From Octopus sinensis (Eukaryota), in contig NC_043016.1 in assembly GCF_006345805.1 (NCBI RefSeq), forward strand, positions 14,570,001 through 14,634,000: 64,000 nt of DNA. Reading direction: 5' to 3'. The position numbers and the translations under genes are program-made. Positions within the stretch are counted from its first letter, which is position 1, and the number at the start of each line of letters is the position of its first letter. Shown here in pieces: positions 1 to 63,880 of this stretch. Below the pieces are notes generated by a model. That model was not told the origin of the DNA and made no database searches. It saw only the letters and a program-made list of their open reading frames with translations.

Positions 1-403
1 GAGGATCACAGAAAAATAGCATAGGATATGAAATTAATGAAACTCAATTAAATCTAAAGTCAACATATAACATCTATAAGGTCTTCACCAAAAATTATCC
101 AGATATTTTATTACTTACCTCAATTACAACCAGGTCAAATTTGAAGAAAAATTTCTTGAAAATAGTACCTGTCACCTATGTTTCATACTCTCAACTTCAA
201 CAACCATGTAAACTATACTGACCAAATTTTACTCCCAAAGATGGTACCAAATGGGAGAAAATGACAAAATATCAGAAATCATTTATTTTGACAAAGTTAC
301 CAATTTTGCCCTACTTCCATATAGTAATGATAGAATGATGAAAAATATAGGAGAAAATTAGAAAGAAAAATGGTTTGATTTAATGAAAAACATTTGCATA
401 TAT

Positions 404-1590
404 AGAAACTCTATAAGATGCACCAAGTGTAAGCTATGGACACATAAGAGGTGCAGCAATGTCATAGGAAGGCTAACTTGGAAGATGGTTTTTGTATGTG
501 GCAGATGCTCGGGAGCATTAACCTCTGAAAATCTGCAGAAAACAACTTCCGTCACTTTCCAGGGGGAAAAACTAGAAGTAGTTGATAGCTTCCGTTATCT
601 TGGTGACCAAGTCAGTAGTGGGGGTGGGTGTGCTGAAAGTGTAACGGCTAGAGTAAGAATAGCCTGGGCAAAGTTTAGGGAGCTCTTACCTCTGTTGGTG
701 ACTAAAGGCCTCTCGCTCAGAGTAAAAGGCAGACTGTATGATGCATGTGTACGAACAGCCATGCTACATGGCAGTGAAACATGGGCCGTGACTGCTGAGG
801 ACATGCGTAAGCTCGCGAGAAATGAAGCTAGTATGCTCCGTTGGATGTGTAATGTCAGTGTTCATAGTCGACAGAGTGTAAGTACCTTGAGAGAAAAGTT
901 GGACCTAAGAGGAATCAGATGTTGTGTGCAAGAGAGACGATTGCGCTGGTATGGTCATGTGGTGAGAATGGATGAAGATAGGTTGTGTGAAAAAGTGCCA
1001 CACCCTGGCAGTTGAGGGGACCTGTGGAAGAGGTAGACCCAGGAAAACCTGGGTCGAGGTGGTGAAGCACGACCTTCGAACTCTAGGTCTCACCAAGGAA
1101 ATGACCAGAGACCGAGACCTATGGAAGTATGCTGTGCGTGAGAAGACCCGGCAAGACCAGTGAGAACAATCAAAATCAAATCATATATCAGAAAGCAGGG
1201 GTTAAGTGACCCATCCGTTCGTGTCCGCTGTCAGCCTCGTCTGGCACCCATGCCGGTGATACGTAAAAGCACCATTCGCTCATGGCCGTTTGCCAGCTCT
1301 GCCTGGCCCCGTGTCGGTGGCACGTAAAAGCACCATCCGTTCGTGTTCGTTGCCAGCCTCGCCTGGCCCTGTGCCGGTGACACGTAAAAGCACCGTCCGT
1401 TCGTGGCCGTTTGCCAGCTCTGTCTGGCCCCGTGTTGGTGGCACGTAAAAGCACCATCCGTTCGTGGCCGTTTGCCAGCTCTGTCTGGCCCCGTGTTGGT
1501 GGCACGTAAAAGCACCATCCGTGTCCGTTGCCAGCCTCGGCTGGCCCCCGTGCCGGTGACACGTAAAAGCACCGTCCGCTGACAAATCAA
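404..1590 (+). mobile_element. 5'-truncated RTE-like LINE (family P): RT C-terminal half plus 3' UTR
   Basis: ORFs 383-1015 and 972-1163 (frameshift): PHD-like C2-H-C3 half, LEVVDSFRYLG, LHGSETW, RRLRWYGHVVRM, GRGRPRKTW; followed by a tandem 3' UTR. Confidence 0.92.
1209..1580 (+). repeat. Tandem array of about six 59-62 bp units in the LINE 3' UTR
   Basis: Each unit ends GGTG(G/A)CACGTAAAAGCACC; two unit subtypes alternate roughly A-B-A-B-B-A. Confidence 0.95.
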
Positions 1591-2689
1591 TTCACATGGA
1601 TGATAAATATGTATCAAGGCTGTATTTTCAAGGGTAATTCAGATACATGTGTATCCAAAGTTACTGGGTTTGCTGTGTATATAAATATATTGCTTATTTC
1701 CTTTGGGGTTAGTCAAACGACTTACACATCTTTGATGAAACACCAATAAGGGTTGAAAACCAATTATGGCTGATCATAATTTTTTTCAGTCTATGGAGAA
1801 ATAGTTTTGAAGTCAACTATGTAGGTTTATACACACACACATGCACACATACACGCACGCATGCACGCACACATGCACACGCACACACATACACACACAC
1901 AAATTATGAAATGTCTTTTCAAAGAAAACGTTATAACCTTGAAGATATGTGACCCTATCAAGTGCAAATGGCTCCTTCTAACAACTGAAGTTGTTTTTTG
2001 CCTTTAATTAACAGAACCAATCAATTTCAATTCCACCGAATGATACGTCTTCATATGCCAACTATTTACAGTTAATTATTGTGATAAGATGAAAAAGCAA
2101 TATCCATTCCTGCAGCATTTGAACTCTTGATCGTAACAAAGGTAATGACACATCATAAGACATTTTGTTACCAGCAATATTATTTATTCCCCTAATAACT
2201 AACAGATATTGTTTCTAATTTAGACACAAGGATAGCAAATTTCTGGCAAGTATTAAGCAAATTACATTGATTAGACTGGTAGTTTTTATTTTATTGGCTC
2301 CTGAACGATGAAAGATAACATTGAACTTGGCAGGATTTAAACTCAAAGCAAGAACAAATACCATGAGATTTCTTTTTCTGATCCTTTGAAAATTCTTCAG
2401 GTCCATTGGTCTTAATTATAACTTACAGATAATGATATATTCTTAGGTTTTATCTTTATTTTCTGTCTTATATTGTGACTCAAGTGGACTCCTTTACTTG
2501 GGGTTTTTGTCATCTGTATTAATTGTTTGCCAGTAAGTTTCTTTGGGAAGTATTCTCCATTAATCAATAGCAACAGGCAATCATAAAATCCTTAATATAA
2601 TCCACTTGTTCTGTAAGTATTTTGCAGTATTTTAGGTGCAACCGTTAATGTTTTGTTAATAAATAAATAAATAAATAAATGTTTTATCT

Positions 2690-3365: not shown

Positions 3366-3944
3366 TACCTATTAATAAAAAAAAATAAATAAATAAAATT
3401 AATAAAACAAAAAAAAATGATAACATTAAAACTCATTAAGTTTTATCTTGATTGATAAGGTACAATAACTTGCTGTTAATAGGACACTGACTCACATATT
3501 ATACATCTAACCAGTGGACACTGCTGTTGGAATGCCTAAGAAGAGCAATCAATATAAACCATTTTGAATATTATTTTAACAAGTTTAAAGTAATTTCTTT
3601 TGTGCTATAAACAATTTGCCATTTCTGTGGTGCCTCACTTCTCTTGATGTGTGCGAAGCATGTACTTATTTTTCCAAATGGCTAATCTAGGTCCGGTGTT
3701 ATTCAATACATTAAACACAAAGGAAAGCATTTAATCTACAACGTGGGACCCTCTGATCTGCAGATATTTAATCTGAGTCTCAACTTATCATTCTGCCTTC
3801 TATCAACACTATCTTCAGTTCAATTCTAGAGTCTCTTACCTTTTAGTTCTTTCCATTGATAACTTTCTGTGTTTATATTGTATATGTGTATACACTGTGT
3901 ATATTATTATGTGATAATGTCAAATGGAAATTGTAGTTGTGATA

Positions 3945-4185
3945 CCTGTGCCGGGAACATGGCCGATGCCAGTGGCGCCTTGACTGGCTTCTGTGTCGGT
4001 GGCATGTAAAAAGCACCAACCGATCGTGGCCGCTGCCAGCCTCTCCTGACCCTTAGTTGGCATTAGGAAGGGCATCCAGCTGTAGAAACATTCCAGATCA
4101 GACTGGAACCTGGTGCAGTCTCCTGGCTTCCCAGACCCCGGTTGAACCGTCCAACCTGTGCTAGCATGGAAAACGGACGTTAAAC

Positions 4186-4225
<40 letters not shown>
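3945..4225 (+). mobile_element. 3' end of family P LINE with (GAT)n tail
   Basis: ggtggcatgtaaaaagcacc, ggcattaggaagggcatccagctgtagaaac, catggaaaacggacgttaaacgatgatgat. Confidence 0.85.
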
Positions 4226-4556: not shown

Positions 4557-5017
4557 TCAAAGCTTCCTGTCGGCTGACCATTCCTTTGTTCCCTATTTCA
4601 CCTTCAAATCAGGCCTTCCTCAAGCTTCCTATTTCTTTGTCTGACCATTCCTTTGTTCCCTATTTCACCTTCAAATCAGGCCTTCCTCAAGCTTCCTATT
4701 TCTTTGTCTGACCATTCCTTTGTTCCCTATCACACCTTCAATCAGGCTTCCTCAAGCTTCCTATTTCTTTGTCTGACCATTCCTTTGTTCCCTATTTCAC
4801 CTTCAAATCAGGCCTTCCTCAAGCTTCCTATTTCTTTGTCTGACCATTCCTTTGTTCCCTATTTCACCTTCAAATCAGGCCTTCCTCAAGCTTCCTATTT
4901 CTTTGTCTGACCATTCCTTTGTTCCCTATTTCACCTTCAAATCAGGCCTTCCTCAAGCTTCCTATTTCTTTGTCTGACCATTCCTTTGTTCCCTATTTCA
5001 CCTTCAAATCACGCCTT
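4557..5017. repeat. 67-bp minisatellite, about 6.7 near-identical copies
   Basis: Unit tgaccattcctttgttccctatttcaccttcaaatcaggccttcctcaagcttcctatttctttgtc starts at 4575, 4642, 4709, 4774, 4841, 4908, 4975. Confidence 0.97.
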
Positions 5018-5123
5018 CTCTTTAACTTCTTATTAATTTATTTACTTACAGCCATTCACTCTCACCTTCTTTGTTAGATGAGAGCCAAGCATTCAAAATG
5101 TTAAGTTATTCACATATTTCATA

Positions 5124-6744: not shown

Positions 6745-9700
6745 GAATACATACATACATACAAAAACATATGCACATACATACATAGACACACATGCAT
6801 ACATACACTCACACACATATACATACATACATACATGCATACATATGAATACATACATTCACACACATATACATTCATACATACATGATGGCTGCCCCCT
6901 CATTATCGAGTATGGCCATTGCACGAAGCTTAACTGTTATTGATGCTGTGATCGAATGTGACTTTTTAGCCCAGCTACATATCTACAGTGTCTTGTACAC
7001 ATTTGGCAGCTAAAACCTTTACCAGTAATAGCCGGCTGTAGTTGTAACTGGGCTTAATGTACCTTTGCATGTTGTTTAAGTCCTCCTGCCGAATTACACT
7101 CTCTTCCACATGCCTGACAGATATGATTAGTATGGTGTATTACACCACCACCAGTGGCCAGGTTGTCACTCATCTGTCTCGCTTTATGACTACGAAGATG
7201 ACTCTTGAGTTCAGCTTTACTGAGGCAGGGTCTTGCACAGACACTGCATATCAGCGTCATAGGAAGACCCTTCCCATATGGAAGTGTAACAGCAATGCCC
7301 TTCCTGACATCCCTCCTTACTTCTCATGTGCAACTCGAGATTTCTCTCAAAGTAGCTGTCCCCTCATACACAATCCTTCTCCACCTGCTACGATCAATAG
7401 CTATGCCTTCCCATGTGTCAGGAGGGATGCAAGCATCTCTTAAAGAAGCNNNNNNNNNNNNNNNNNNNNNNNNNNNNNNNNNNNNNNNNNNNNNNNNNNN
7501 NNNNNNNNNNNNNNNNNNNNNNNNNNNNNNNNNNNNNNNNNNNNNNNNNATCTGAGCCTTTGCTTTAATACAAGAGCTTCTATACTTTCACACCGAGAGC
7601 CTTCTAGATATTTCAAGATCACTGATGCGGTCCTTCCACTTAATGCCATAGATCCGTCTGAGGCACATCTGATGGAAACGTTCCAGATGTTTAAGGTGGT
7701 ATCGATATGTGACCCACGTCTTGCAGGCATAGAGAAGAGAAGTGAGCACACATGCCTTGTACACCTTTATCTTTGTCTTTCTGCATATGTTTCGCCGACT
7801 CCAGAGGCGCCTTTCTAGCCTTTCGAAAGCATCACTTGGTTTCCTAATTCTGTATGGAATTTCATCATTCAAATTGCTACATCTATTAACAGTGCTTCCC
7901 AGGTAGACAAACTGATCAACTACATCAAGTCATTTACCATACACATAGATATTTGGTACACTATACTGCTTACCAGGGGCAGGTTGGTACATGACAACTG
8001 TTTTCGTGAGACTGACTGTCAATCCTAAGGCAGTGCAAGCATCAGAGAATGCATTCAAAATGTGTTGCATATCAATCGCTGTGTGCGCTACTAGATCACA
8101 ATCATCTGCATACAAAGGGTCTCTTATGATAGAGGTAAATACCTTTGTTTTTGCAGCAAAGCGCCTGATATTAAATATGCTGCCAGAGGTTTGATAATGG
8201 ATGTAAACACCATATCTGCAGTTTCTGAATGCAATACAGAAAACATCGCAAATATATGGCAAATAGGTCGATACCAGGATATCCTCTGTTTCACTCCATT
8301 TTTATATGAAATGGGCTCCGACTTTTCCCTCTAACATTAACCCTACTCTTCATGTCTTCATGAAAAGACCTAACCAAAGCAAGGAACTCTCAGGACACAC
8401 AAGTTTCTGGAGGACTTTCCACAATGCTTTTCTATTAACGGTAATCAAGGCTTTCATCAGATCGACAAAAACCTGATACAAGTCCAGACCCTGTCCCACA
8501 CACTTCTCCTGAAGCTGTCTAGCTGAAAGATCATATCAGCAGTGTCCACATCCCACATGAAGCCAGATTGACTTTCTGGAAGAACACAATCTGCAACGTT
8601 TTCAGCAGATGATCCAGAAGTACCCTCAAAACCTTTCCTATGACAGAAAGCAATGATACCCTATAATTACCACAATCATTCCTGTTGCCCTTTTCCTAAT
8701 ATCAGACCACCATTACTGTATCTCTCCAGTCCTCAGGTACAGATTCACTAGTCCATATCTTACCAAACAAAGAGTGAAGTTGCTGCAGAAGTTTCTCACC
8801 ACCATGCTGTAACAACTCCGCATGTATGCCATCCATACCCGGAGATTTCCCATTATTCATCCTTGAGACAGCCATTGCAACTTCCTTCAGCTTTGGTGGT
8901 TCTGCGAGTGCTGCCTTCACGGGTAATCCAAGGATGAGATTGAGAACGTCCTCACTAACTACAGACTGCTGATTCAAAAGTTCATCAAAGTGTTCTTGCC
9001 ACCTTCGCAGAATTCCTTGTGAATCATGAAGAAGTTCTTTACCATCCCTGCTTCGAAGTGGTGTCATCAGAGAAGATGTTGGTCCATAAACTTCTTGCAA
9101 GAGACCATACAACAGCTTTGTGTTATTGGAATCTGATGCCGCCTGTATCTCATCAGCCTTCTTACTCCACCACATATCCCTCATCTGAGAGAGCCTTTGC
9201 CTCACACGTGATTTTACATCCTTGAGTTCCCTATGCAACACTTCCCTTTCCTGTGGCTTTGCTGACAAATAGTGTGACAAAGTACATCTTTTATCAGCCA
9301 ATAAATCATCTATATGTTCATCATTTTCTTTAAACCAATTTTGAAGCTTTCTTTGTATCAATCCCAGAACTTTCTTGCCTATATCATAAACTGACTTTTT
9401 AAGGGTTGGCCAATCCTCCCCAATATCTGCAGCATTCATCTCCTCTCATAAAGTTCTCTTCACACTATTACACCTAAGACGATCAACATTCAGCCTTTTA
9501 GGCAGGGTAATCCCTGCAGTCCGGATTTTATGTTTTGTGACTAATTTCACTTTCACAAGTACTAGGCGGTGGTCAGTCCAACACCCAGCTCCACGAAGAA
9601 CATGAACACACTGCACATCCTGCCTCTCATGCACCCTAACAAGGATGTAATCCAGAATATGCCATTCTTTAGATGCAGAGTGCATCCATGTAGTCTTAAA

Positions 9701-11223
9701 CTTATTCTTTTGTTGAAACACGGTATTAGTAACACAGACACAGCTCCTCGTATTTCTGCAGCAAAAGCATGCCATTACTATTACACTTTCCCACCCCATT
9801 CTTTCCAATTACAGTCCATTTGTTAAAATCCCTACCCACTCTAGCATTAAAGTCACCCAGTACGATGACTTTGTTTGCCCGAGGGATAGTTCTTATAATG
9901 CCCTTCAAAGCATGGTAGAAAGAAAGTTTTTCGTCATCAGTATAGCACATAGTTGGAGCATACACACTCACCAAGGTCACTTAATTTCCTTTAACCAAAG
10001 GAATTCTCATGGACATAAGACGCTCGTTAATTCCGACTGGGAATTCTTCCAACTTGTCCACAAGAGTAGTCTTAACAGCAAATGCCACTCCAGCTTCTCC
10101 TCTAAACTCATCTCTCCCTTTCCAAAAGAATGTATATTTTCCACAAGATTCTGTAAGATGACCATCTCCAGGTTGTCTTGTCTCAGATAAAGCAACGATG
10201 TCAAGATCATAGCGTTGAAGCTCCTTCGCAACAAGCGCAGTCCTTCTTTCAGGACATTCAGAGGACTTGCGGTCAAGCAGTGTCCGTACATTCCAACAGC
10301 CAATATTCAATATTTTATTTGGTTCTATCACAGTAGCATGATGATGGCTGGGTTCAGACTGTGATGCTCTGGAGCCCCTGCCAGGCCAGACTATTTCATC
10401 TGATGTGGTTCCAGAGTCCTTACTGCCATTTATTTTTATACTGTTTTGGTACATCATTGAATTTTTTTGCTTTTTAAGGCTACAGCCAGCCATTCAGTTG
10501 AGACTCACAACGATCATGAATTAGTTAATCAATTTAATCAATCAATCAATGTTGTTATCATGCAATGCCTGTGCAAGTAGATTTTTTTTATAGTGAGGAT
10601 AGGCTGTGCACTGAGTCAATCCCACTCACTAAGCAACAGCAGCCATAATCCGAAAAGAAGAACAAGTCAACATCATCGGTAATCAATGAGCTGCAAGTTT
10701 TATGTTGGAGTTATCCCAGTTACCTGAGTTACCTTCTCCTAGAAGGATGCCCTAACAAAGGCTGGGAGTCCTTCACTCCCAATGGTTTAACCGTGTGATC
10801 GGGTATTCAGTCCGATTATTTCTATGTCCCTGCGCATGATACAGCCTGAAAAAAAAAAAGAAACATACGATATATATATATAAAAAAAAACATTGATATA
10901 CAAAATATACATAAAATATATGATGCGAAGTATATAAAAATTTAATAATGAGCAAGCTATAAAAATATACAATATATAAAAATTAGTGAGAAAAAGGCAG
11001 ATATACAGTAAATATATAATTACACATTTATTGGATGGCTGTTGACTCTCAAGAGTTCCTTCACCCTTTGACGGGTTTTGTTTTTCATCCTGCAGGGTGT
11101 CCAATAAACATCTTCCTCACCAAGCAAGCTTGGTGGGGTTGCCGGTTTAGTCGCTGACGGCCCAACCATGCAACAGGTTGTACTGGGTTACATGTTACCA
11201 GTAGCACTCAAAAGTGACCTGAC
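6745..11223 (-). mobile_element. Near full-length decayed RTE/BovB-like LINE (RTE-A)
   Basis: APE endonuclease (NIGCWNVRTLLD, ALSET, LGDFNARVG, DHRLV), RT (GKSPGMDGI, LYADDCDL, YLGS), C-terminal C2H2 fingers; many stops/frameshifts; (TGTA)n-like tail. Confidence 0.95.
7450..7549. other. Assembly gap (100 N) inside RTE-A
   Basis: Run of 100 N; RT sequence is colinear on both sides. Confidence 1.
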
Positions 11224-11802: not shown

Positions 11803-11881
<79 letters not shown>

Positions 11882-12395
11882 CAGGGTGGCAAAGAGCACC
11901 GTACGAGTGTGATCATTGACAAACCGGCTAACCGGCTTCCATGCCAGTGGTACTTAAAAGGCACCATTCGAGCGTGATCGTTACCAGCGTCGCACTACTG
12001 GCACTCGAGCCTTGTGCTAGTAGGGTATTAAGAGTACCATCTGAGCGTGATCATTGCCAGAGTGGCTATATGGCCTCCGTGCTGGTGGCACGTAAAAAAC
12101 ACCATTCGAGCAGGATCATTACCAACGTCACTTCACTGGCACCTGTGCTGGTGGCACGTGTAAAAAGATTTGGGCGAGGTCGTTGCCAGTGCCACCTGAC
12201 TGGCCCCGTGCTGGTGGCACGTAAAAGCACCCACCACATTCTCAGAGTGGTTGGTATTAGGAAGGGCATCCCGCTGTAGAAACTGTCAGATCAGATTGGA
12301 GCTTGGTGCAGCCATCTGGTTTGCCAGACCTCAGTCAAAATCGTTCAACCCATGCTAGCATGGAAAGCGGACGTTAAATGAGGATGTTGATGATA
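11530..12395 (+). mobile_element. Two family P 3' ends (11530-11648 and 11885-12395) separated by (TA)n
   Basis: Repeat units with ggtggcacgtaaaa..cacc, the ggtattaggaagggcatcc tail and (GAT)n. Confidence 0.85.
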
Positions 12396-16880: not shown

Positions 16881-16942
<62 letters not shown>

Positions 16943-16971
16943 GTATGTGTATATATATATATATATGTATG

Positions 16972-17435
16972 TACCTTATTAGAATGGAGGATAGAAGGAT
17001 TCCTAAGCAGATGCTCTATGGAGAACTTGTGAATGGAAGGAGACTCCGGCAGAAACCAAGGCTGCGATTTAAGGACTGTGTCAAGTCCTCATTAAAGGCT
17101 TTTGATATGCGGGACACTGACTGGGAGAACAATGCCTGTCATCGCCACAGATGGAGGAAGCAGGTTAAGGAGGGGATCGACACCTTTGAGAGAGCACGTA
17201 TCCACCATGAAGAACTTAAGTGAGCTGCGCGAAAGCGCACGGCTAGTATAGTGAATGGGGAAAGCTTGGTCTGCAATGTTTGCAGTCGTGTATGCTTGTT
17301 AAGAGCAGGGCTCATTAGCCACCAACGGAGCCGTAAATGCAAAATATAAGTTAGTCCTAGAGCGCACAATGTTCCTGAAGGGTCGGCAATGGTCTTCCTC
17401 GGTCACAAGTGGACGGCCATCATGTATGTATGTAT
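16972..17435 (+). mobile_element. 5'-truncated copy of RTE-B family 3' end
   Basis: IRMEDRRIPKQMLYGELVNGRR...; roughly 94% identical to 22640-23070 in opposite orientation; ends ggacggccatca(tgta)n. Confidence 0.93.
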
Positions 17436-19490: not shown

Positions 19491-19608
19491 GTATGTATGA
19501 ATGTATGTATGCATGTATATATATATATATATGACCATACCAGCACAGTTGTCTCTCTTACATACCACATCTGATGCTTCTTAGGTCCAGCCTTTCTCTC
19601 AAGGCACT

Positions 19609-20485
19609 CGACAGAGTGTTAGTGCTTTGAGAGAAAGGTTGGACCTAAGAAGCACCAGATGTGATGTGCAAGAAAGACGACTGCGCAGATATGGTCATTC
19701 AGCGAGAATGGATGTGGATAGCTGTGTGAAAAAGAGCCACACCCTAGCAGTTGAGGGAATCTGTGGAAGAGGTAGACTCAGGAAGACCTCAGATGAGTTG
19801 GTGAAGCACAACCTTCAAACATTGGGTCTCACTGAGGCAATGACCAGTGACTGGGACCTCTGGAAATATGCTGTGCTTGAGAAAACTGAGACCATAACCT
19901 TGTGGCCTATGCCAGCGGGGTAACCAGTTCACTTATGCGTGCCTTTCTTCATTGGACACTAAACTCTGCTTGCGAAAACTTGTTGAGGCAAGTGAAATCG
20001 AAATCAAAATCAAACTCGGTGACTGGCATCTGTTGCTAGTGAAGCGCTAAGAGTACCATACGAGTGAGATCGTTGCCAGAGCAACAAGCTAGCCTTCGTG
20101 CAGATGGCACATTAAAAACACCATTCGAGCATGATCATTACCTGCATTGCCTTACTAGCACTTGTGCTGGGTGGCACGGGAAAAAAAACATTTGAGCAAG
20201 ATTGTTGCCAGTGCTGCTGGACTGGCACCCGTGCAGGTGGCACATAAAAAGCACCATTTGAGTGTGGCCATTGCCAGTACCACCTAATTGGCCCATGTGT
20301 CGGTGGCTCGTAAAAGCACCCACTACACTCTCTTAGTGGTTGGTGTTAAGAAGGGCATCCAGCTGTAGAAACTCTGCCAGATCAGATTGGAGTCTGGTTT
20401 GCCAGACCTCAATCAAATCGACCAACCCATGCTAGCATAGAAAGTGAACAATGTTAAACAATGATGATGATGATGATGATGATGA
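19609..20485 (+). mobile_element. Family P LINE 3' part with repeat array and (GAT)n tail
   Basis: RERLDLRSTRCDVQERRLRRYGH...; four repeat units; aagaagggcatccagctgtagaaac tail. Confidence 0.9.
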
Positions 20486-25600: not shown

Positions 25601-26700
25601 CTTCCTTTCCAAAAAAAGGTGTATCCACCTCCTACTTCCTCAAGCTGACCATCACCTTCTATATGAGTCTCTGAGAGTGCAGCTATATCAATTTTATAAC
25701 GGTTCAGTTCACGAGCAACAAGTGCAGTGTGTCTTTTAGGCCTGCAATCACTCTTGTTGTCCAACAGAGTGTGCACATTCCAACATAAAATGTTTAAGTT
25801 CCGTCCAGATTTTATAGATAAAAGACTCTTTGTTTTTTGAGTGCAGGTTGGACACCCGTCAGTTGCGCTAAACTGACCAGATATGGAAAGACAGGCAATT
25901 TTTGGTTCACCTTTTCTTGAACCTCCCTGGTCTCTGGATGAGCAGTGCCCTCTCCAAAGGAGACGACTTTATATATATAGCATGGGCTGCCTACATGCAG
26001 GTCGCTGACTACATGCTTCCAACCCATTAGATCTGCATGCTTCACCACCTTCCCATCGCTGCAGGACTTCCGAATAAAAAAAATTAAAACATATACTAAA
26101 AATGAAGAAAATATATACTAAAAATAAGATAAATATATACCAAAAAAAAATGCACATATCGAGCAGAGGTCTGCAATGCCTGTGCAGAGTTTTAGGTCCA
26201 ATAAGGCTTGCACAACACCTCATAGACCCTCTCCACTTTATTGATAATATCCAGAGACAAGCCAGAGCAAAATGTCTGGTGCCAATATGAGTCACAGGCT
26301 CAGGAATGTGGGAGCGCCGTGATCTCTAGCACAAACCAAAGATCCCCAAAGTGTCCAATGCCATTCCCTGCATATCTGGTTTTATATCAGAGTGACCTTC
26401 TCCTAGAGACATGCTTTAACAAAAGCTGAGGGGCACCTCACTCCCAGTGGTCTTTCAACACGCTGGACACCACCCCGGAATTTCTGCGTATCCGTGCTAA
26501 CATTTATTGGATGGCCGTTGACTCTCAAGAGGTCCTCCGCCCTTAGACAGGTTTTGTTTTTTCATCCAGCAGGGTGTCCAATAAACACCCTCCTCACCAA
26601 GCAAGCTTGGTGGGGTTGCCGGTTTAGTCGCCGACGACCCCACCATGCAACAGGTTGTACTGGGTTACATGCTACCAGTAGCACTCGAAAGTGACCTGAC
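22625..26700 (-). mobile_element. Near full-length decayed RTE/BovB-like LINE (RTE-B)
   Basis: ORFs 24805-25776 (APE), 23850-24182 and 23307-23831 (RT: YRGIALLS, IDLTKAFDTV, GVKQG, LYADD), 22695-23294 (C-terminus, single zinc finger). Confidence 0.96.
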
Positions 26701-30079: not shown

Positions 30080-32435
30080 GTCCCTCTGACTGGGTAACCA
30101 TATATCTCCTCTACAGTAAGATACCTGTTTCTATCCCTCTATCACGTTCTAATCTTTCATCACCTGGCACAAGGCCACCTCCTCCAATGCCCCTCCCCTT
30201 ACAAAGGATCTTTGTCGTGCACATTGTTTGTTGACCTCGCCAGTGTTGGTGTATCCAGTCTACACTGTAAAGTCCTTGGGTGTTTGGAAGGGCATCCAGC
30301 AGTAAAAACCATACCAAAACAGGCCCCACCAGTCCTGGTGCAATGTAAAAAACACTCATTCTACTCTGTAAAGTGGTTGGTGTTATGAAGGGCCGTAAAA
30401 ACCCTGCCAGAACAGACAGTGGATCCTAGCTCAGCCTTCTGCCTTACCAGCTCCTGACAAACTGTCCAACCCATGCCAGCATGGAAAATGGGCATTAAAT
30501 GATAATGACGATGATGGTGATGATGATGATGATGACATATATATATATATGTATATATATATATTATATTAATTTTATTTCTATGTTTTGGTTTATGTTT
30601 TTCACTGTTTGATTTGCCTAATAGTGGTTTTATCTCTAATTTTATATATATATATATATAAACATACGTATCTATACATACAGACATGCATACATAATGG
30701 ACTGAGATGTGGTAATATGAGGTTCTAGAGAAGACCTTCCTGAGTTCCTGAGGTGTTGTGTCCCACCCACACATGACAATAAGACTTTCCCACACCCTAC
30801 TCCAACAGACCAAACTCCATCCCTCCCTTCCCAAACTGTTTCTCTTCATACAATTATGCTTATCTCCCACTCTCCCTTCCAGTCCTGCCCTACCCTGCTC
30901 ACCGTATTGTTGCTTCTCCCATCCCCTCCCTCCACCAGTCCCACTCCTTACTCACAACTTCTTAACAATACCCTGCCAGTACCTTCCACCTTTCATCTCT
31001 CTCTATCTTCCTTACTCTACCATCCCATCTATGCCCTGATCTCTATTCCTTGTAAGTATACTCTGCCATTTGCTGCCATCCCTCTCCTGTTCATGCTGTC
31101 TCCTACTCTCTCTCTCTCTCTCTCTCTCTCCCTTGCTCTCCCCTCTGGTTGAATAATCATGCATCTCTTCTACAGCAACAAACCCCTTTCTTAACTGTCC
31201 CTCCTCTTCAGCAGCACACCAGTTTCTACTTTCATTCTTGTTAACTTTCATCCTCTTTCCCTCTCTTCCTCTCCCTCTCTTTCTCTCCCTCTCCCTCTTT
31301 CTCCCCCTCTCTCTTTGGCCAGGTAACCATGTACCTCCTCTACAGCAACATATCTGTTTCTGTCTCTCTGTCACACTCTAACCTTTCCTCATATGACCCA
31401 AGATCACTTCCTCCAGTGCCACCTCCCCTCTCAAAATTCCTTGTCTTGCAGGTTACTTGGTGACCCACTCAGTGAAGCAGTGCAGGTGCCATTTAAAAAG
31501 CACCAGTTCACAAAGTGGTTGGCATTTGGAAGGGCATCCAGCTGCAAAAACCATGTCAAAATTGACCACGCCTGTGCTAGTGCCATGTAAAGAACACTGA
31601 GTCCCCTCTGCAAAGTGGTTGGTGTTAGGAAGGGCATCCAGCTGTAAAAACCCTGCAAAAACAGACACAGTAGCCTGGAGTAGTCTACTACCCGGTGCCA
31701 GCTTCTGTCAAGCTGTCCGACCCATGTCAGCAAGGAAAGAGGATGTGAAACGATGATGAGAATGAGGATGATACTATACACACATACACGCATATAAAAT
31801 ATATATGTATCTAATGTATACCTCTTTCATCTTTTATCTCGTACTTGTTTCAGTCGTTAGAATGTGACAATCCTGGAGCACTGCTTTGAAGGATTTCTAG
31901 TCGAATGATCCGACCCCTGTACTTATATCTGCTTTAAGCCAGCTACTTATTCTATCAGTTGCTTTGCTGAACCACTAAGTTAGAGGGATGTAAACACACC
32001 AATACCATTTACCAAGCTGTGTGGGGGACAAGCACAGACATGCACATGCAGATACACACACACACACACATACACAGACACATACATGCATACACATACT
32101 TACACACACACACATATATATAGTTTACTGTTCTGTTAGGGTACTCCATCCAGTGAGAGATAAATATCTTTTAATATACACAGTATAAAGATAAACTCTT
32201 AATGGCAGGAAATGTGTCTTAATAGCAAGAAACTACCAATAGCTCTTATTTTAATAGTGTACATTAAATGACACACACACATGCACACACACACACATGC
32301 ACACACACACACACATTCATATATCTGTACACATATAAGTAAGTAGATATTTCTATACATCCATATGTATATGTATACTCTTTTACTCTTTCTTGTTTCA
32401 GTCATTTGACTGCGGCCATGCTGGAGCACCGCCTT

Positions 32436-32472: not shown

Positions 32473-33550
32473 ATATATATCATCATCATCATCATCATCG
32501 TTAACGTCTGCCTTCCATACTGGCATGGGTGGTAGAATGGTTTGACAGGAGCTGGCCAGACAGAAGCCTGCACTAGACTTCTGTAACTGTTTTGGCCAGG
32601 GATTTTTGGAGCTGAATGCCCTTCCAACATCAGCCACCACTCAGCAATGGACCTGGTGCTTTTTATGTGAGATCAGTTTTGCAAGGTATTTTTTTACAGC
32701 TGGATGCCCTTCCTAATGCCAACCTTTTTACAGTGTGGACTTGGATGCTTGCACTGATATGGTTTCCAAGTACCTTGCAAAACAAACATCTTTTTGTAAA
32801 GGGAGGTGATCTTGTGTCAGATGAAAGGTTATAGTGAGACAAAGAGACAGAAATAGGTGTGCTGCCACAAAGGAGATACATGGTTACCAAACCTGAGGGA
32901 AGTGAAGGAGAAGGAGAGAGAAAGTGGGAGACAACAGGATAGAGATGGTTGCAAAGTGCTGGGTGTACTCACAAGGGACAGGGATCAAAATATAAATGAG
33001 GTGGTTGAGTAAAAGCAGAGAGAGATATAGATGGTGGCAAGTGCCTGGGCATACCCTTGAGGTTCGAAGGTCATAATATAAATGGCAGGATATTGTGAAA
33101 GAAGCAGGATTAGAGAGTGTGGAGAGTTGGGGAAGTGAGAGGTGAAAACCTGGGTTTATATAGAGTGGTGGTGGTGGTGGTGGTGGTGGTGGTGGGCTAC
33201 CGCATGGCAATGATACAGAGAAACAGGGCCCGAGAGGACAGGATTGGGGAGTGAGAGATAGGCATAGTGAATGAAGGAGGAAATGTGAGGAAGAGATGAG
33301 AAGTGGAAATGTAGATTGGTTTGTTGAGTAGGGTGAGTGAAAAGTTTTCTTGTTACGTGTGGGTGGAACACACAGGTCAGGGGTTAGTGGAGAGCAATGA
33401 TACAGTGGCCTAGGGACAAGAGGACAGGATTGGGGAGTGGGAGGTAAGCATAGTGCATGAAGTAGTAATGAGAGGAAGAGAAGAGATGTAGTTTGGTTTG
33501 TTGTTGTAGAGTGTGTGAGGAGTTTTCTTTTTAAGTGTGGGTGGGGCACC
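30080..33550. mobile_element. Three copies of a pyrimidine-rich retroelement 3' region (family Q): 30080-30535 +, 30720-31760 +, 32480-33550 -
   Basis: All share ggtaaccat(g/a)ta.ctcct...acaag..cac.tcc and end in the same ggaagggcatccagc tail plus (GAT)n as family P. Confidence 0.75.
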
Positions 33551-34113: not shown

Positions 34114-34665
34114 TGCCTCACTGAGGCAATGACTAGTGACCGGGACCTTTGGAAATATGCTGTGCTTGAGAAGACTTGGCAAGCCAAATGAGACCATAAC
34201 CTCGTGGCCTATGCTAGTGGAGCACTAAGAGTACAATACAAGTATGATCATTGCCAGAGCAACAACCTGGCCTCTGTGCCAGTGGCATGTAAAAAGCACC
34301 ATTCGAGCATGATCGTTGCCTGTGTCACCTTAATGGCACTTGTGCTGGTGGCACATGAAAAAACATTCGAGCAAGGTCGTTGCCAGTGCCACTGGACTGG
34401 CTCCTGTGCAGGTAGCACATAAAAAGGGACCATTTGAGTGTGGCCGTTGCCAGTATCGCCTGAGTGGCCCTCATGCCGGTGGCACGTAAAAGCACCCACT
34501 ACACTCTCAGAGTGGTTGGTGTTAGGAAGGGCATCCAGCTGTGGAAACTCTGCCAGATCAGACTGGAGTCTGGTGCAGCCATCTGGTTTGCCAGACCTCA
34601 GTCAAATCATCCAACCCATGCTAGCATGGAAAGTGGACGTTAAACAATGATGATGATGATGATGA
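34114..34665 (+). mobile_element. Family P LINE 3' end
   Basis: ORF2 end (gaggcaatgactagtgac..gacctttggaaatatgctgtg), four repeat units, tail, (GAT)n. Confidence 0.9.
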
Positions 34666-36169: not shown

Positions 36170-36525
36170 AAGCCAGTGCCATATAACTGGCTTATGTGCC
36201 ACCATGCTGGTGGCACATAAGAAGCACCATTGAGGCAGTGTCAGGTGACTGAGACCTTTGGTGACATACCATGCTTGTGTAGACCTGTCAAGCCAAGTGA
36301 GACGTAGTCATGGCCAATGCTGATGTCAGGGCAATGGCACCTGTATCAGTGGCATGTAAAAAGATTCTACTACACTCTTGGAGTGGTTGGCATTAGGAAG
36401 GGCATCCAACCATAGAAACATTGCCAAATGAGATTGGAACCCAGTGCAGCTCCCTGGCCTACCAGTTTTCAGTCAAACCATCTGACCCATGCCAGCTTGG
36501 AAAGTTGGCATTAAATGATGATGAT
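36170..36525 (+). mobile_element. 3' end of a family P-related LINE (long-unit subfamily)
   Basis: catgctggtggcacataagaagcacc; ggcattaggaagggcatcc tail; (GAT)n. Confidence 0.8.
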
Positions 36526-36893
36526 GTAAGAGGAAAACTCTCAAGAATATTTTTATAAAATCTTATTTATAACACTTTGTAGGCCAGGGAGCTGCACTGG
36601 GTATTTTTTAGTCATCCTACATTTGTTCATAGCACCTTTGTATATATTTTCATTAGTACTTTTCATTAGTCTTTGTGTGAAACAAGCAAGACAGAGATTA
36701 TGAATGTAAAGATTTGGAGTTTGGGAAACAGTTTTTTTTTACCAGTGTTCAGCTAACAAATATGGATATTTCTTTTGCTCAAATTCCAACCTTGTACCAA
36801 CAGAAAATATTGCTGTTAAAGTTAACTATTTCTCTGTATTCTAAATATTTCATGGATAGATCTTTGGATTGTTCTCAAAAAATGATGGGTTAC

Positions 36894-38344: not shown

Positions 38345-38595
38345 ATATAAGCATGTGTGAAAGGCTTGCTTCGCAATCCTTTTGTTCTGGGTTCGATCCC
38401 ACTGTGAGGCACCTTGAGCACATGTCTTCTACTATAGCCCCATCCAACTAAGATTTGTGAGTGGATTTGATAGAAGCCTGTTGTATGTGTGTGAGTTCAA
38501 CTTTGTAACTGTGTTTTCCCCCTTGACAACCAGTATTAGTGTATTTATGTCCCCATAACTTAGGAGTTCAGCAAAGGAGATCAATAGAAACAGTT

Positions 38596-39600
38596 TTTGT
38601 GTGTGGAAGGAGCACAGGCACAATGAACACTAAAAACATACAAGAAATAGACTCCATCAAATGCCAGTGGGGAAAACTAGAAGTAGTTGGTAGCTTTCAT
38701 TATCTACGTGAAGAAGTCAGTAGCAGAGGTGGATGCTCCAAGAGCGTAGTTGCAAGAATTAGAATAGGCTGGGTAAAGTTCAGAGAGCTCCTACCTCTGT
38801 TCACAGCAAAGGGCTTCTCCCTCAAAGTGAAGGGCAGACTGCATGCATGATGCCTGTGTGTGAACAGCTATGCTACATGGCAGTGAAACATGGACTGTGA
38901 CCATCGAGGACTTGCATAGGCTTGAAAGAAATGAAGTTAGTATGCTTCATTGGATGTGCAATGTCTGTACATGTTCAACAGAGTGTAAGCATCTTGAGAG
39001 AAAAGTTGGGTATAAGAGGCATCAGATGTGGAATGCAAGAGAGATATGATGTGTATGGATGAGGATAGCTGTGTGAAGAAGTGCCAATCTCTAACTGTGG
39101 AGGAACCTGAAGACATGGGACAAGAGAGCTAAGCATGATTTTTGAATGTTGGGCCTCACAGAGGTAATGACTAGTGACCAAGATCCCTAGCGATATACTG
39201 TGCTTGAGAAGACCCATCAAGCCAAGTTAAATCATAGTTGTGGCCAATGCTGGTGTCACTTAATTTGCACCCATGCTGGTGGCATGTAAAAAGCACCTTT
39301 CAAGCATTGGGCCTCATGGAGGCAATGACAAATGCCTGAGACCTATATGCCGTAACCTACATGCCATGCTTGAGCAGAAGACGATCAAGTCAAGTGAAAC
39401 TGTAGTTGTGGCAGATACTGGTATCATACAAGTGGCACCCATGCTGGTGGCACGTAAACACACTCATTACACTCTCAGAGTGGTTGGTGTTAGGAATGGC
39501 ATTCCGCTGAAAAAGCCATATCAAATCAGATTGGAGCATGACGCAGCCCCCTCAGCTTGCAAGCCCTGGTGAAACAGTCCAACCCATGGGCAACAGATGT
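38596..39600 (+). mobile_element. Family P-related LINE: RT C-terminus and duplicated 3' UTR
   Basis: VFVCGR..., LEVVGSFHYL, FRELLPLF, LKVKGRL, then two long 3' units and tail. Confidence 0.88.
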
Positions 39601-41294: not shown

Positions 41295-41299
<5 letters not shown>

Positions 41300-41337
<38 letters not shown>

Positions 41338-41761
41338 TATTATATATATATTATATATTATATATATATGTAATATAATATAAATATATATATTAATATA
41401 TATATAATATATATATATATGTAAATATATATATATATATATATATATAGATATATCTATATATATGTAAATATATATATATATAATATATATATATATA
41501 GATATATATATATATTTTATTATTATATATATATTATTATATATATTATATATATATGTAACTTATATATATTATATATATTATATATATATGTAAATAT
41601 ATATCTATATATATATATATATAGTATAATATATTATTATATATATATTATATATATATGTAAATATATATATATATAATATATAATATATATAGTATAT
41701 ATATATATTATATATATATGTAAATATATATATATAGATATATATAATATATATGTGAAAA

Positions 41762-54834: not shown

Positions 54835-55616
54835 AGTGGCGAGAATGGATGAAGATTGCTGTGTGAAAAAGTGCCACACCCTAGCAGTTGAGGGAACCTG
54901 TGGAAGAGGTAGACCCAGGAAAACCTGGGATGAGATGGTGAAGCACCACCTTCAAACATTAGGCCTCACCAAGGCAATGACTAGTGACTGAGACCTTTGG
55001 AAATATGCTGTGCATGAGAAGACCCGGCAGGACAAGTGAGACCATAACCAGGGATGTAGCCAGCTAACTTATGCATACCTTTCCTTCTTTGGACACACAA
55101 CTCTGCTTGCGAAGACCTGTTGGGGCAAGTGAAATTGAAACTGAACCAAATTTGATGACTGGCACCTGTGCCTGTGGAGCGCTAACAGCTCCATCCGAGC
55201 AGGATCACAGCCAAAGCAGCTGTCTGGCTTCCGTGCCGGTGGCACATAAAAAGCACCATTTGAGCGTGATTGTTACCTGCGTCGCCTTACTGGCACTTGT
55301 GCTGGTGGCACGTGAAAAAACATTCGAGCGAAGTCATTGCCAGTGCTGCTGGCCTGACTCCTGTGCAGGTGGCACATAAAAAACACCATTTTCGAGCGTG
55401 GCCGTTGCCAGTACCGCCAGACTGGCTCTCGTGCCAGTGGCACGTAAAATCACCTACTACACTCTCGGAGTGGTTGGTGTTAGGAAGGGCATCCAGCTGT
55501 AGAAACTTTGCTAGATCAGATTGGAGCCTGGTGCAGCCATCTGATTCGCCAGTCCTCAGTCAATTTGTCCAACCCATGCTAGCATGGAATGCGGACATTA
55601 AACGATGATGATGATG
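54835..55616 (+). mobile_element. Family P LINE 3' end
   Basis: RMDEDCCVKKCHTLAVEGTCGRGRPRKTW, five repeat units, tail, (GAT)n. Confidence 0.92.
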
Positions 55617-63358: not shown

Positions 63359-63554
63359 CAAGGATGTAGCTTTCTTTTAGTCATCCATGTCATATAAAAT
63401 ACAGATATTACCTTTCAGTACTGATACTGCTTTTGTTGCTAGTAACTAAATTTTTATAGGTTTTATTGTTATATTGAAAATAGAGTCAGAAAGTTTGGGG
63501 ATCTTCAGGTTGGAGTTTTTTTAATGACTGTATTATAAAAGAGTGAAGTGAAAC

Positions 63555-63880
63555 TATAGTTGTGGCCAATGTTGGTGTCATGTAACCGGCACGTAAAAAG
63601 CACCTTTTGAGCATTGGGCGTCACAGAGGCAAAGTGGATGATGCTGGTGGCACATGGAAAGCTCCTTTCAAGTCTTTCGTAAAGACAATGACAAATGACC
63701 AAGACCTTGGCATTATGTCATGCTTGAGAAGAAGACCCATCAAGCCAAGTAAAATCGTAGGCATGACAGATACTGGTGTCATGCAAATAGCACCCATACT
63801 GGTGACATGTAAAAGTACCCATTACACTCTCAGAGTGGTTGGCATTAGGAAGGGCATCCAGCCATAGCAAACCATGCCAT
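63555..63880 (+). mobile_element. 3' end of family P-related LINE (long-unit subfamily)
   Basis: ggcacgtaaaaagcacc..., actctcagagtggttggcattaggaagggcatccagcc. Confidence 0.8.

What the first reader, a model, noticed from the sequence alone, without database searches (positions are those of the whole stretch)
1209..1580. Tandem array of compact H-type RNA pseudoknots in LINE 3' UTRs
Seen: every unit has (C)GTGC-N-GGTG-GCAC(G)-TAAAA(A)R-CACC, which folds as S1 CGTGC/GCACG, 1-nt L1, S2 GGTG/CACC and an A-rich 7-8 nt L3. L1 varies freely (C, T, A at 20231, 34407, 55364), as expected for a loop but not for a simple hairpin. Units also carry a GCCAG/CTGGC hairpin with a variable loop. The motif closes each unit both in the about 62-bp subfamily (1.2, 12, 20, 34, 55 kb) and in the about 165-bp subfamily (36, 39, 63 kb). 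Known: this geometry resembles luteoviral-type frameshift pseudoknots. Inference: a multimerised RNA element (RT-binding site, exonuclease block or transcript stabiliser) selected in an active LINE family. Caveat: the CATGC/GCATG variant at 39271 looks like covariation but could be double CpG decay, and several copies carry stem mismatches.
Basis: partly seen in the sequence, partly recalled or inferred. Interest (0 to 1): 0.7.

Follow-up and report, generated by a model that had tools for sequence, protein, structure and literature searches.

The report
Repeated RNA motif in octopus LINE tails
The 3' untranslated tails of an octopus LINE retrotransposon family carry tandem copies of a conserved 24-25-base motif that certainly can form a small hairpin and may form a tiny pseudoknot, but the pseudoknot itself and any function remain unproven.

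Summary
Window 1211-1578 is a 61-bp x 6 tandem array directly after the stop codon of a 5'-truncated LINE ORF (endonuclease, reverse transcriptase and PHD-finger type; octopus genome). The core YGTGY-N-GGTG-RCACR-TAAAA(A)N-CACC occurs 34 times on the + strand, against 0 in shuffles. It sits in at least 10 LINE or LINE-derived 3' ends.

The core also appears in a LINE lineage only about 70% identical in protein (L047), where the sequence between cores has largely changed. So it looks selected, not a fresh minisatellite.

Stem S1 (CGUGC/GCACG) is predicted by RNAalifold. It shows more kept pairs and double changes than column shuffles. Most of these changes sit in CpG sites, and the one non-CpG pair shows no association.

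Stem S2 (GGUG/CACC), which makes the fold a pseudoknot, is nearly invariant, so it is untestable by covariation here. One unit of the 64-68-bp subfamily has no CACC in all four copies. Nested-fold z-scores are near 0. A rough pseudoknot energy is no better than the nested alternatives.

The ancestral reverse-transcriptase recognition site is more likely the terminal hairpin plus (GAT)n, which is shared even with a Hydractinia LINE.

Verdict: a conserved, reiterated cis motif; S1 hairpin likely; pseudoknot plausible (about 0.35-0.4); function inferred only.

The parts
383..1163 (+). 3' part of a 5'-truncated, frameshifted LINE ORF (reverse transcriptase C-terminal region with a PHD-like finger; ...LRWYGHVVRMDED...GRGRPRKTW...). 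The stop is TGA at 1161-1163.
   Evidence: ORF list; weak PHD hits; homologues are Octopus reverse transcriptase/PHD proteins at 70-93% identity.
1211..1578 (+). Tandem array of 6 units (57-61 nt) in the 3' UTR. Each unit is a linker, a GCCAG/CTGGC hairpin and the core motif. Stops occur in all three frames.
   Evidence: TRF period 61 x 6.1; sequence; translation.
1250..1273 (+). Core 1: ATGC-C-GGTG-ATAC-G-TAAAAG-CACC. S1 has two mismatches.
1311..1334 (+). Core 2: GTGT-C-GGTG-GCAC-G-TAAAAG-CACC. The top pair is U.G.
1371..1394 (+). Core 3: GTGC-C-GGTG-ACAC-G-TAAAAG-CACC. The top position is a C.A mismatch.
1432..1455 (+). Core 4: GTGT-T-GGTG-GCAC-G-TAAAAG-CACC.
1493..1516 (+). Core 5, identical to core 4.
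1550..1573 (+). Core 6: GTGC-C-GGTG-ACAC-G-TAAAAG-CACC.
1292..1307 (+). Example of the unit's GCCAG-loop-CTGGC hairpin (H3). One is present in each unit.
3920..4225 (+). 5'-truncated LINE 3' UTR copy with one core (3993-4017), the tail and a long (GAT)n.
11881..12392 (+). LINE 3' UTR fragment: an array variant with extra 5' units (cores 11941, 12079, 12145, 12208), then the tail at 12233-12392.
19608..20472 (+). LINE ORF end, spacer, array (units u0-u4; cores 20098, 20166, 20231, 20297), tail and (GAT)n.
34117..34658 (+). Truncated LINE end with an array (cores 34276, 34342, 34406, 34473) and the tail.
54836..55616 (+). Best-preserved copy. ORF end (stop at about 55038), spacer, array at about 55160-55454 (cores 55233, 55299, 55363, 55431), conserved tail domain, terminal hairpin 55569-55587 and (GAT)n 55604-55616.
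36204..36526 (+). Copy of the long-unit subfamily: core at 36204-36228, a degenerate core at about 36342, and the tail.
38593..39588 (+). Long-unit subfamily. ORF end plus two units of about 160-168 bp, each carrying a copy of the ORF's last codons and a 26-nt doubled core (39247-39297, 39441-39464), then the tail.
63540..63870 (+). Long-unit subfamily copy. Cores at 63580, 63641 and 63770/63796 (26-nt tandem pair), plus the start of the tail.
30200..30530 (+). Short SINE-like element: head, half of the tail domain, a core variant (30332-30356), the tail and (GAT)n.
31400..31770 (+). Same short element type with two core variants (31480, 31574). GGTGC...GCACC gives a 5-bp S2, and S1 is weak.
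32487..32800 (-). Same short element type on the minus strand, with a decayed core.

Best explanation
The array is the sense-strand 3' UTR of an octopus LINE family of endonuclease, reverse transcriptase and PHD-finger type. Each 57-68-nt unit encodes a small RNA module. The module is a GCCAG/CUGGC hairpin with a free loop, 3-4 nt of linker, and then a 24-25-nt core: YGUGY-N-GGUG-RCACR-UAAAA(A)N-CACC.

The core's 5-bp S1 hairpin very probably forms. Its GGUG loop is placed to pair with the CACC 6-8 nt downstream. That would give a minimal H-type pseudoknot with a 1-nt L1, no L2 and an A-rich L3 lying along the S1 minor groove.

I commit to this reading of function. The reiterated module is an accessory cis element of the retrotransposon RNA. 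It acts as a multivalent platform for the element's own proteins, or as a shield for the 3' end. It sits upstream of the ancestral terminal hairpin plus (GAT)n, which is the primary reverse-transcriptase recognition and priming site.

Shown: the motif, its repetition, its position, its conservation across lineages, and the complementarity of S1 and S2.
Inferred: that S2 actually pairs, the base triples, and the function.
For: 1. Non-random, strand-specific motif: 34 + strand instances against 0 in shuffles.
2. The array always lies between the LINE stop codon and the tail. In the copies that keep the standard tail, the last core directly abuts it.
3. Conservation. Locus L047 carries a LINE whose protein is 71% identical to the Octopus vulgaris copy. 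Its ORF is 63-72% identical in DNA and its tail about 75%, but its cores match the octopus core at 21 of 24 positions. Its short units (52-53 nt) have lost the linker and carry a different preceding hairpin.
4. Among four copies of the 64-68-bp subfamily, non-CpG differences are 4.7% in S1+S2+L3 against 10.5% elsewhere in the unit (p=0.006). Against the linker alone the figure is 8.2% (p=0.13).
5. RNAalifold on 25 whole units predicts S1.
6. S1 is 85.8% paired against 81.6% in shuffles (0/500). It has 17 double-change cells against 10 expected (2/500).
7. U.G cells outnumber C.A cells 24 to 15 in S1, the direction expected for a sense-strand RNA helix.
8. S2 is complementary in 90% of cells. 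L3 is never shorter than 5 nt. L1 is A or G in units u3 and in L047, where the competing extended hairpin cannot form.
9. Two units that have lost S1 keep or extend S2: w31480 has GGUGC/GCACC and L047 1665 has CCAGUG/CACUGG.
10. Short non-autonomous elements keep one core next to the tail.
11. Precedent: avian R2 protein recognises a small pseudoknot with base triples, followed by an A-rich tract, in its 3' UTR (PMC12222951).
Against: - S2 shows no covariation: 90.0% paired against 89.4% in shuffles (113/500), with one A-U double change.
- Unit 2 of the 64-68-bp subfamily lacks CACC in all four copies yet keeps GGUG.
- Unit 1 of the L001/L048 subfamily has AACC, which leaves S2 at 3 bp.
- The S1 double changes are mostly at CpG sites. 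The p0-q0 and p1-q1 tables have odds ratios near 4 by my arithmetic from the counts, with no test run and non-independent units. The non-CpG pair p4-q4 shows no association: CG 23, UG 11, CA 4, UA 2.
- Three of the six units in the flagged array have a C.A mismatch at the top of S1.
- The long-unit subfamily consensus has an A.C mismatch inside S1.
- Nested-fold z-scores are +0.23 for the array and -0.6 to +1.2 for single cores.
- A rough pseudoknot energy (-6 to -7 kcal/mol, using a generic penalty recalled from memory) is no better than nested folds (-5.3 to -8.7).
- GGUG has alternative partners. One is an upstream CACC in CUGGCACC. The other is L1, when it is C or U, pairing with G4 of GGUG.
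- There is no functional evidence of any kind.
Confidence: 0.37

Rival explanations
1. The array is made of hairpins only. S1, together with the GCCAG/CUGGC hairpin, forms. GGUG is a sequence-specific loop, and UAAAA..CACC is a single-stranded flank read directly by a protein. No pseudoknot forms.
For: - S1 is the only helix in the core with any comparative signal.
- S2 is invariant, as a protein-read sequence would be.
- Unit 2 keeps GGUG without CACC.
- When L1 is C or U (36 of 45 units), a 6-bp hairpin with a triloop is the nested minimum-energy fold.
Against: - It does not explain why the loop is exactly complementary to a conserved tetramer at a sterically suitable distance in four lineages.
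- It does not explain the units that lose S1 but keep or extend S2.
- The spacing between GCAC and CACC varies over 6-8 nt. That suits a loop better than a rigid linear protein site.
Confidence: 0.28
2. The array is a neutral minisatellite. The units are slippage or unequal-exchange products of a GC-rich, partly palindromic 3' UTR segment. The apparent conservation reflects recent common ancestry and array homogenisation.
For: - Copy number varies from 1 to 6 between copies and subfamilies.
- A higher-order 121-bp period, and mismatched unit types, were amplified within the 1.2-kb array.
- Whole octopus units, not only the core, are fairly similar to one another.
- Fold energies are unremarkable.
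Against: - The core is kept at 21 of 24 positions in L047 units whose remaining sequence has been replaced.
- The core has a lower non-CpG substitution rate than the rest of the unit.
- At least one core is retained beside the tail in every tail-bearing lineage seen, and in the short non-autonomous elements.
Confidence: 0.17
3. The motif works at the DNA level. The inverted repeat GTGCC-GGT-GGCAC, with CACGT(G)-like half sites, is a protein-binding site in DNA, for example a regulatory site carried by the element.
For: - The sequence is palindromic.
- CACGTG is present in some units: unit 2 of the 64-68-bp subfamily and the L047 5' arm.
Against: - The asymmetric parts of the motif (UAAAA, CACC) are as conserved as the palindrome.
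- All copies share the sense orientation relative to the ORF.
- Wobble changes favour U.G over C.A on the sense strand.
- CpG decay in inserted copies shows no constraint after insertion.
Confidence: 0.05

Closest known systems
Pseudoknotted 3' UTR element of avian R2 (R2Tg) recognised by the R2 protein to start target-primed reverse transcription (PMC12222951)
   Same: Both are small RNA elements in a non-LTR retrotransposon 3' UTR. Both are proposed or shown to be pseudoknots with base triples, followed by an A-rich tract. R2Tg's is a cis element for the element's own protein.
   Different: - The R2 element is single-copy and lies within the last 67 nt of the 3' UTR. It is experimentally and structurally proven.
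- The octopus core is reiterated 1-6 times and lies 150-170 nt upstream of the 3' end.
- There is no sequence or Rfam similarity.
- The octopus core is unproven.
Luteovirid-type minimal H-type frameshift pseudoknots (BWYV, PEMV, ScYLV type), recalled from memory
   Same: The geometry is similar: S1 of about 5 bp, a very short L1, S2 of 3-4 bp, and an A-rich loop of about 6-8 nt able to lie in the S1 minor groove.
   Different: - The octopus core is not inside an ORF overlap, and no slippery site was looked for because the arrays lie 45-170 nt past the stop, so it is not a recoding signal.
- L1 is 1 nt here, against 2 nt in those viruses.
- No junction nucleotide is present.
- There is no structural data.
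3' terminal stem-loop plus short tandem repeat of stringent-type LINEs and their SINE partners (UnaL2, ZfL2, SART1; summarised in PMC5135761)
   Same: This LINE family ends in a conserved hairpin (CCCAUGCUAGCAUGG) followed by (GAT)n, and shares that tail with short non-autonomous elements.
   Different: That description fits the terminal hairpin, not the repeated core. The core lies upstream, is reiterated, and has no counterpart in the relatives checked (L002, L003, L050, L051), which end right after the ORF.
Tandem repeats and minisatellites in LINE UTRs in general
   Same: Variable copy number, head-to-tail units, and a location in a UTR.
   Different: Here a 24-nt core inside the unit is conserved across LINE lineages whose inter-core sequence has turned over.

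Membership tests
H-type RNA pseudoknot | The loop of hairpin 1 is complementary to a segment 3' of the hairpin. | tested here: met
   GGUG/CACC form standard pairs in 90% of 180 cells over 45 units.
H-type RNA pseudoknot | Loop lengths are able to span the grooves (short L1 across S2, L3 of at least about 5 nt along a 5-bp S1). | tested here: met
   L1 is 1 nt, L2 is 0, and L3 is 5-8 nt in all aligned units. The steric rule itself is taken from general knowledge.
H-type RNA pseudoknot | Comparative support (compensatory change) for stem 1. | tested here: inconclusive
   More pairs and double changes than shuffles. However, they are mostly at CpG sites, and the non-CpG pair shows no association.
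H-type RNA pseudoknot | Comparative support for stem 2. | tested here: inconclusive
   S2 is nearly invariant, with one A-U double change, and is not above shuffles. Unit 2 lacks the 3' strand.
H-type RNA pseudoknot | The pseudoknot is more stable than competing nested folds. | tested here: inconclusive
   The rough estimate is -6 to -7 kcal/mol against -5.3 to -8.7 for nested folds. No pseudoknot-capable predictor was available.
H-type RNA pseudoknot | Both stems are formed in solution (chemical probing, NMR). | not testable with these tools
   Needs wet-lab probing.
Programmed -1 frameshift stimulator | Lies a few nt downstream of a slippery heptamer inside an ORF overlap. | tested here: not met
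   The arrays start 45-170 nt after the stop codon. Units are 57-68 nt (not multiples of 3), and all three frames carry stops.
LINE (non-LTR retrotransposon) 3' UTR | Directly downstream of the reverse-transcriptase ORF stop, on the sense strand. | tested here: met
LINE (non-LTR retrotransposon) 3' UTR | Followed by the element's 3' terminus (tail plus microsatellite); many 5'-truncated genomic copies. | tested here: met
   Met at 12, 20, 34 and 55 kb and in L001, L047 and L048. Not met for the 1.2-kb array itself, which lacks the standard tail.
Stringent-type LINE reverse-transcriptase recognition stem-loop | Sits at the extreme 3' end next to the terminal short repeat. | tested here: not met
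   The cores end about 150-165 nt before (GAT)n. The terminal hairpin at 55569-55587 fits this feature instead.
Stringent-type LINE reverse-transcriptase recognition stem-loop | Match to a curated model (Rfam UnaL2, R2 and similar families). | tested here: not met
   No Rfam hit at gathering score, and nothing relevant at E up to 10.
Exoribonuclease-resistant RNA (xrRNA) | Match to known xrRNA families, or a ring-like fold around the 5' end. | tested here: not met
   No Rfam match. The ring topology cannot be tested here.
tRNA-derived repeat | A tRNA-like cloverleaf is detectable. | tested here: not met
   ARAGORN finds no tRNA in the window.

The most novel reading that the evidence does not exclude
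A cephalopod-specific, multimerised minimal H-type pseudoknot with an A-minor triplex was inserted between the ORF end and the ancient terminal hairpin of a LINE. It is required in cis for mobilising both the LINE and its short partner elements, either as a second valency-tunable protein docking site or as an exonuclease-resistant guard of the priming end.
Probability: 0.18. Interest if true: 0.65.

Novelty: new variant of a known kind. Interest (0 to 1): 0.4.

Why it matters
If the fold and a cis role were confirmed, this would be a second, independent case of a non-LTR retrotransposon using a small pseudoknot in its 3' UTR; the first is R2. Here the element is reiterated and shared with non-autonomous partners.

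It occurs in a lineage, the octopus, whose genome expansion is dominated by such elements. It would give a compact, testable handle on how a "stringent" LINE marks its own RNA, and on why copy number of the module varies between subfamilies.

If it is only a conserved hairpin or a minisatellite, it is an ordinary feature of repeat annotation.

Tried and rejected
- Rfam. No hit at gathering score on the whole window. In E-value mode on two 3' UTRs, only chance-level hits appeared, for example TLS-PK2 at E 5-9.
- tRNA origin. ARAGORN found nothing.
- Coding repeat. Rejected: unit lengths are not multiples of 3, and all three frames carry stops.
- Frameshift signal. Rejected by position.
- Public scans. 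The viral scans for the tail and for the core gave only chance hits. The genome-contig scans for the core and for the tail gave 0 hits.
- Metagenome scan. The tail pattern gave 17 contigs from other organisms, none with the core upstream. This was useful only to show that the tail domain is widespread and the core is not part of it.
- Protein-guided loci. L002, L003, L050 and L051 (45-58% relatives) have no long 3' UTR. L052 and L053 were uninformative. P0064 is not on record. No closer relatives of L047 were available.
- Alignment A1. MAFFT on short windows put all gaps at the ends and misaligned CACC. It was replaced by A2.
- Literature. Sequence and keyword searches found no description of this motif.
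- LINE clade. I could not name it from the tools.
Full report
WHAT IS THERE

The window is animal DNA: 38% G+C, CpG observed/expected 0.37, and dense microsatellites.

TRF reports an array at 1211-1578 with period 61, 6.1 copies and 83% matches. It also shows a 121-bp higher-order period. The array starts 48 nt after the TGA (1161-1163) that ends a 5'-truncated, frameshifted LINE ORF at 383-1163. That ORF reads ...LRWYGHVVRMDED...GRGRPRKTW....

The ORF's closest proteins are Octopus bimaculoides and O. vulgaris reverse transcriptase/PHD-finger proteins at 70-93% identity. Relatives at 45-58% occur in oysters, Hydractinia and amphioxus. Full-length relatives carry endonuclease, RVT_1 and PHD domains. 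I could not assign the LINE clade with these tools.

IS IT MORE THAN CHANCE?

At up to 6 mismatches there are 34 + strand hits and 2 weak - strand hits, against 0 in shuffles. The hits lie in at least 10 LINE or LINE-derived 3' ends in the window.

ANATOMY OF THE 3' UTR

An alignment of four window copies (12, 20, 34, 55 kb) with the O. vulgaris locus L001 shows this order:
- the stop codon;
- a spacer of about 110-170 nt;
- 4-5 units of 64-68 nt;
- a tail of about 160 nt;
- (GAT)n.

The tail begins CACUACACUCUCAGAGUGGUUGGYRUUAGGAAGGGCAUCC. It ends with the hairpin CCCAUGCUAGCAUGG, 16 nt of linker and then (GAT)n. A second octopus-like contig (L048) has 5 units of 62-67 nt.

Each unit is a linker (AUYCGAGCGUGRYCGUU), a GCCAG-loop-CUGGC hairpin, 3-4 nt, and then the core YGUGY-N-GGUG-RCACR-UAAAA(A)N-CACC. 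In the copies that keep the standard tail, the last core directly abuts it.

A long-unit subfamily (36, 39, 63 kb) repeats about 160-168 bp. That repeat includes the ORF's last codons and a 26-nt doubled core (TRF period 26 at 63770-63822).

Short SINE-like elements at 30.2, 31.4 and 32.7(-) kb carry a distinct head, a half copy of the tail domain, one core variant and the tail. The element at 3920-4225 is a 5'-truncated LINE 3' UTR.

WHERE THE ARRAY CAME FROM

More distant relatives have no such UTR. L002 and L003 end in (GTAA)n or (GAA)n right after the stop.

In the Hydractinia LINE (L050), the sequence GTCCAACCCATGCTAGCATGGAA is identical over 23 nt to the octopus terminal hairpin. There it forms the last codons of the ORF, followed by the stop and then, 9 nt later, a GAT/ATG trinucleotide repeat.

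So the terminal hairpin plus repeat is ancestral. It is the natural candidate for the 3' recognition and priming site of a "stringent" LINE (background: PMC5135761). The spacer, the array and the tail domain are later insertions between the ORF end and that hairpin.

The tail-domain 23-mer occurs in 17 metagenome contigs from other organisms. None of them has the core upstream. The core is therefore not part of that widespread domain.

IS THE CORE SELECTED?

Locus L047 carries a LINE whose protein is 71% identical to the O. vulgaris copy. Its last 300 ORF bases are 63-72% identical to the octopus copies, its tail is about 75% identical, and its spacer is essentially unalignable.

Its four good cores read GUGU-R-GGUG-RCAC-R-UAAAA(A)W-CACC, which matches the octopus core at 21 of 24 positions. 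Two of its units are only 52-53 nt. They have lost the linker and carry a different hairpin (GUGUCA/UGGCAC) in place of GCCAG/CUGGC.

Among the four copies of the 64-68-bp subfamily, non-CpG differences from the unit consensus are as follows:
- 4.7% in S1+S2+L3;
- 8.2% in the linker (p=0.13);
- 9.6% in linker plus spacer (p=0.027);
- 10.5% in everything else (p=0.006).

These results point to purifying selection on the core in the active lineages. The sample is small.

STEM S1

RNAalifold on 25 whole units predicts the 5-bp S1 and part of the GCCAG/CUGGC stem.

On the 45-unit alignment A2, S1 is 85.8% paired against 81.6% in column shuffles (0/500). It has 17 double-change cells against 10.0 expected (2/500). 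Slid controls give 5-70% paired.

The tables behind this are sobering:
- p0-q0: CG 16, UG 8, UA 8, CA 4.
- p1-q1: GC 28, AC 7, GU 5, AU 5.
- p4-q4: CG 23, UG 11, CA 4, UA 2.

The first two pairs both lie in CpG dinucleotides. Their odds ratios are about 4 by my arithmetic from these counts. No test was run on them, and many units are duplicates or orthologues. The only non-CpG pair, p4-q4, shows no association.

U.G cells outnumber C.A cells 24 to 15, the direction expected for a sense-strand RNA helix, but the excess is weak.

My conclusion is that S1 is a conserved inverted repeat that very likely folds.

STEM S2, THE PSEUDOKNOT

GGUG/CACC is complementary in 90% of cells. That equals the shuffled expectation of 89.4% (113/500), because both strands are almost invariant. 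There is one A-U double change, at w31574.

For pairing:
- L3 is 5-8 nt and never shorter.
- There is no L2, apart from a 7-nt insertion in the single decayed copy L049.
- L1 takes all four bases across lineages.
- Two units that have lost S1 keep or extend S2: w31480 has GGUGC/GCACC, and L047 1665 has CCAGUG/CACUGG. Both of the latter's changes are CpG-type.

Against pairing:
- Unit 2 of the 64-68-bp subfamily has no CACC in all four copies but keeps GGUG.
- Unit 1 of the L001/L048 subfamily has AACC.
- In 36 of 45 units L1 is C or U. It can then pair with the last G of GGUG to give a 6-bp hairpin with a GGU triloop, which ViennaRNA prefers as the nested fold.
- In many units an upstream CACC (in CUGGCACC) competes for GGUG.

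ENERGETICS

The S1 hairpin is -3.7 to -6.1 kcal/mol. S2 alone as a hairpin is -3.8 to -4.9, and the S2 stacks contribute about -7.5.

With a generic pseudoknot penalty recalled from memory (Dirks-Pierce type), the pseudoknot comes out at -6 to -7 kcal/mol. Nested folds are -5.3 to -8.7. That is a toss-up, and it ignores coaxial stacking and triplex bonuses.

Nested-fold z-scores are +0.23 for the 1.2-kb array, -2.0 for the whole 55-kb 3' UTR, and -0.6 to +1.2 for single cores. Thermodynamics neither supports nor refutes the pseudoknot.

THE FLAGGED ARRAY ITSELF

None of its six cores is ideal. Three have a U.G top pair, two have C.A, and one has two mismatches. The two unit types alternate as a 121-bp dimer, so they spread by local array expansion.

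This copy also lacks the long spacer and the standard tail. After the last core comes GTCCGCTGACAAATCAATTCACATGGATGAT, and then unrelated sequence. It is thus an atypical, probably rearranged member of the family. The best exemplars are at 55160-55616 and in L048 and L047.

FUNCTION

Nothing here tests function directly. Two facts argue for a cis role in the element's RNA life cycle rather than in translation:
- at least one core is retained next to the tail in every tail-bearing LINE lineage seen;
- the short non-autonomous elements also keep a core.

The terminal hairpin plus (GAT)n is ancestral, so I place the cores as an accessory. They would act as a reiterated docking or protective module, not as the primary recognition site.

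The closest proven analogue is the small pseudoknot with base triples and an A-rich tract in the avian R2 3' UTR, which is necessary and sufficient for priming (PMC12222951). There is no sequence or Rfam similarity to it or to any curated family.

The cores are not frameshift signals, tRNA-derived, or coding.

NOVELTY AND VERDICT

Keyword and literal-sequence searches of the paper library found no description of this motif. The library is incomplete, and repeat databases could not be queried.

I rate it a new variant of a known kind: a structured cis element in a LINE 3' UTR. My probabilities are:
- about 0.7 that the core is a selected cis motif;
- about 0.75 that S1 forms;
- about 0.35-0.4 that the pseudoknot forms and matters.

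Interest is 0.4.

Noticed in passing
L050:3875-3930 versus window 55566-55616: The 23-nt sequence GTCCAACCCATGCTAGCATGGAA, with the same kind of trinucleotide-repeat tail following, is identical between a Hydractinia (cnidarian) LINE and the octopus LINE. In Hydractinia it encodes the last codons of the ORF. In octopus it is non-coding, about 550 nt past the stop. This is either extreme conservation of a probable reverse-transcriptase recognition hairpin or horizontal transfer.
   Followed up: partly
window, whole; tails listed: Eleven of the 13 detectable tails of this element family are on the + strand. This is an orientation bias, such as is seen inside a gene transcribed from the opposite strand. 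No host gene was identified.
   Followed up: no
window 55470-55500 and loci L030-L046: The tail domain GGTTGGYRTTWGGAAGGGCATCC(A/G)GC..TAAAA occurs in 17 metagenome contigs from other organisms. It looks like one of the widely conserved SINE central domains. From memory I think it is Nin-DC/Deu, but this was not verified.
   Followed up: partly
window 39247-39297 and 63770-63822: In the long-unit subfamily the core itself is tandemly doubled with a 26-nt period. This suggests the 61-68-nt unit was built up from a smaller repeat.
   Followed up: partly
window 1574-1604: The flagged array is followed by GTCCGCTGACAAATCAATTCACATGGATGAT rather than the standard tail. This resembles the pre-array spacer of L048 (…AACATCAATGGAATTT), as if the array and spacer order were swapped or the copy rearranged.
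   Followed up: no
window 8702-10493 (-), 22695-25776 (-), 16900-17223 (+), 45411-45869 (-): Fragments of a second, unrelated LINE family are present (endonuclease plus reverse transcriptase; C-terminus ...RLRQKPRLRFKDCVKSSL...). Their 3' ends were not examined for similar motifs.
   Followed up: no
window 4574-5018: A 67-bp tandem repeat with 6.7 copies at 97% identity lies just downstream of the truncated LINE tail at 3920-4225. It is unrelated in sequence to the core motif.
   Followed up: no
window 41299-42914; 58689-59299; 7450-7549: There is a 1.6-kb (TA)n tract, a 600-bp GATG-based 24-nt minisatellite, and a run of 100 N (an assembly gap).
   Followed up: no
L048:1156-1193 and other units with CTGGCACC: An upstream CACC, the 3' end of the preceding hairpin plus 2 nt, can pair with the same GGUG loop. 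It is chosen in the nested minimum-energy fold of some units. This alternative partner complicates any probing experiment.
   Followed up: partly
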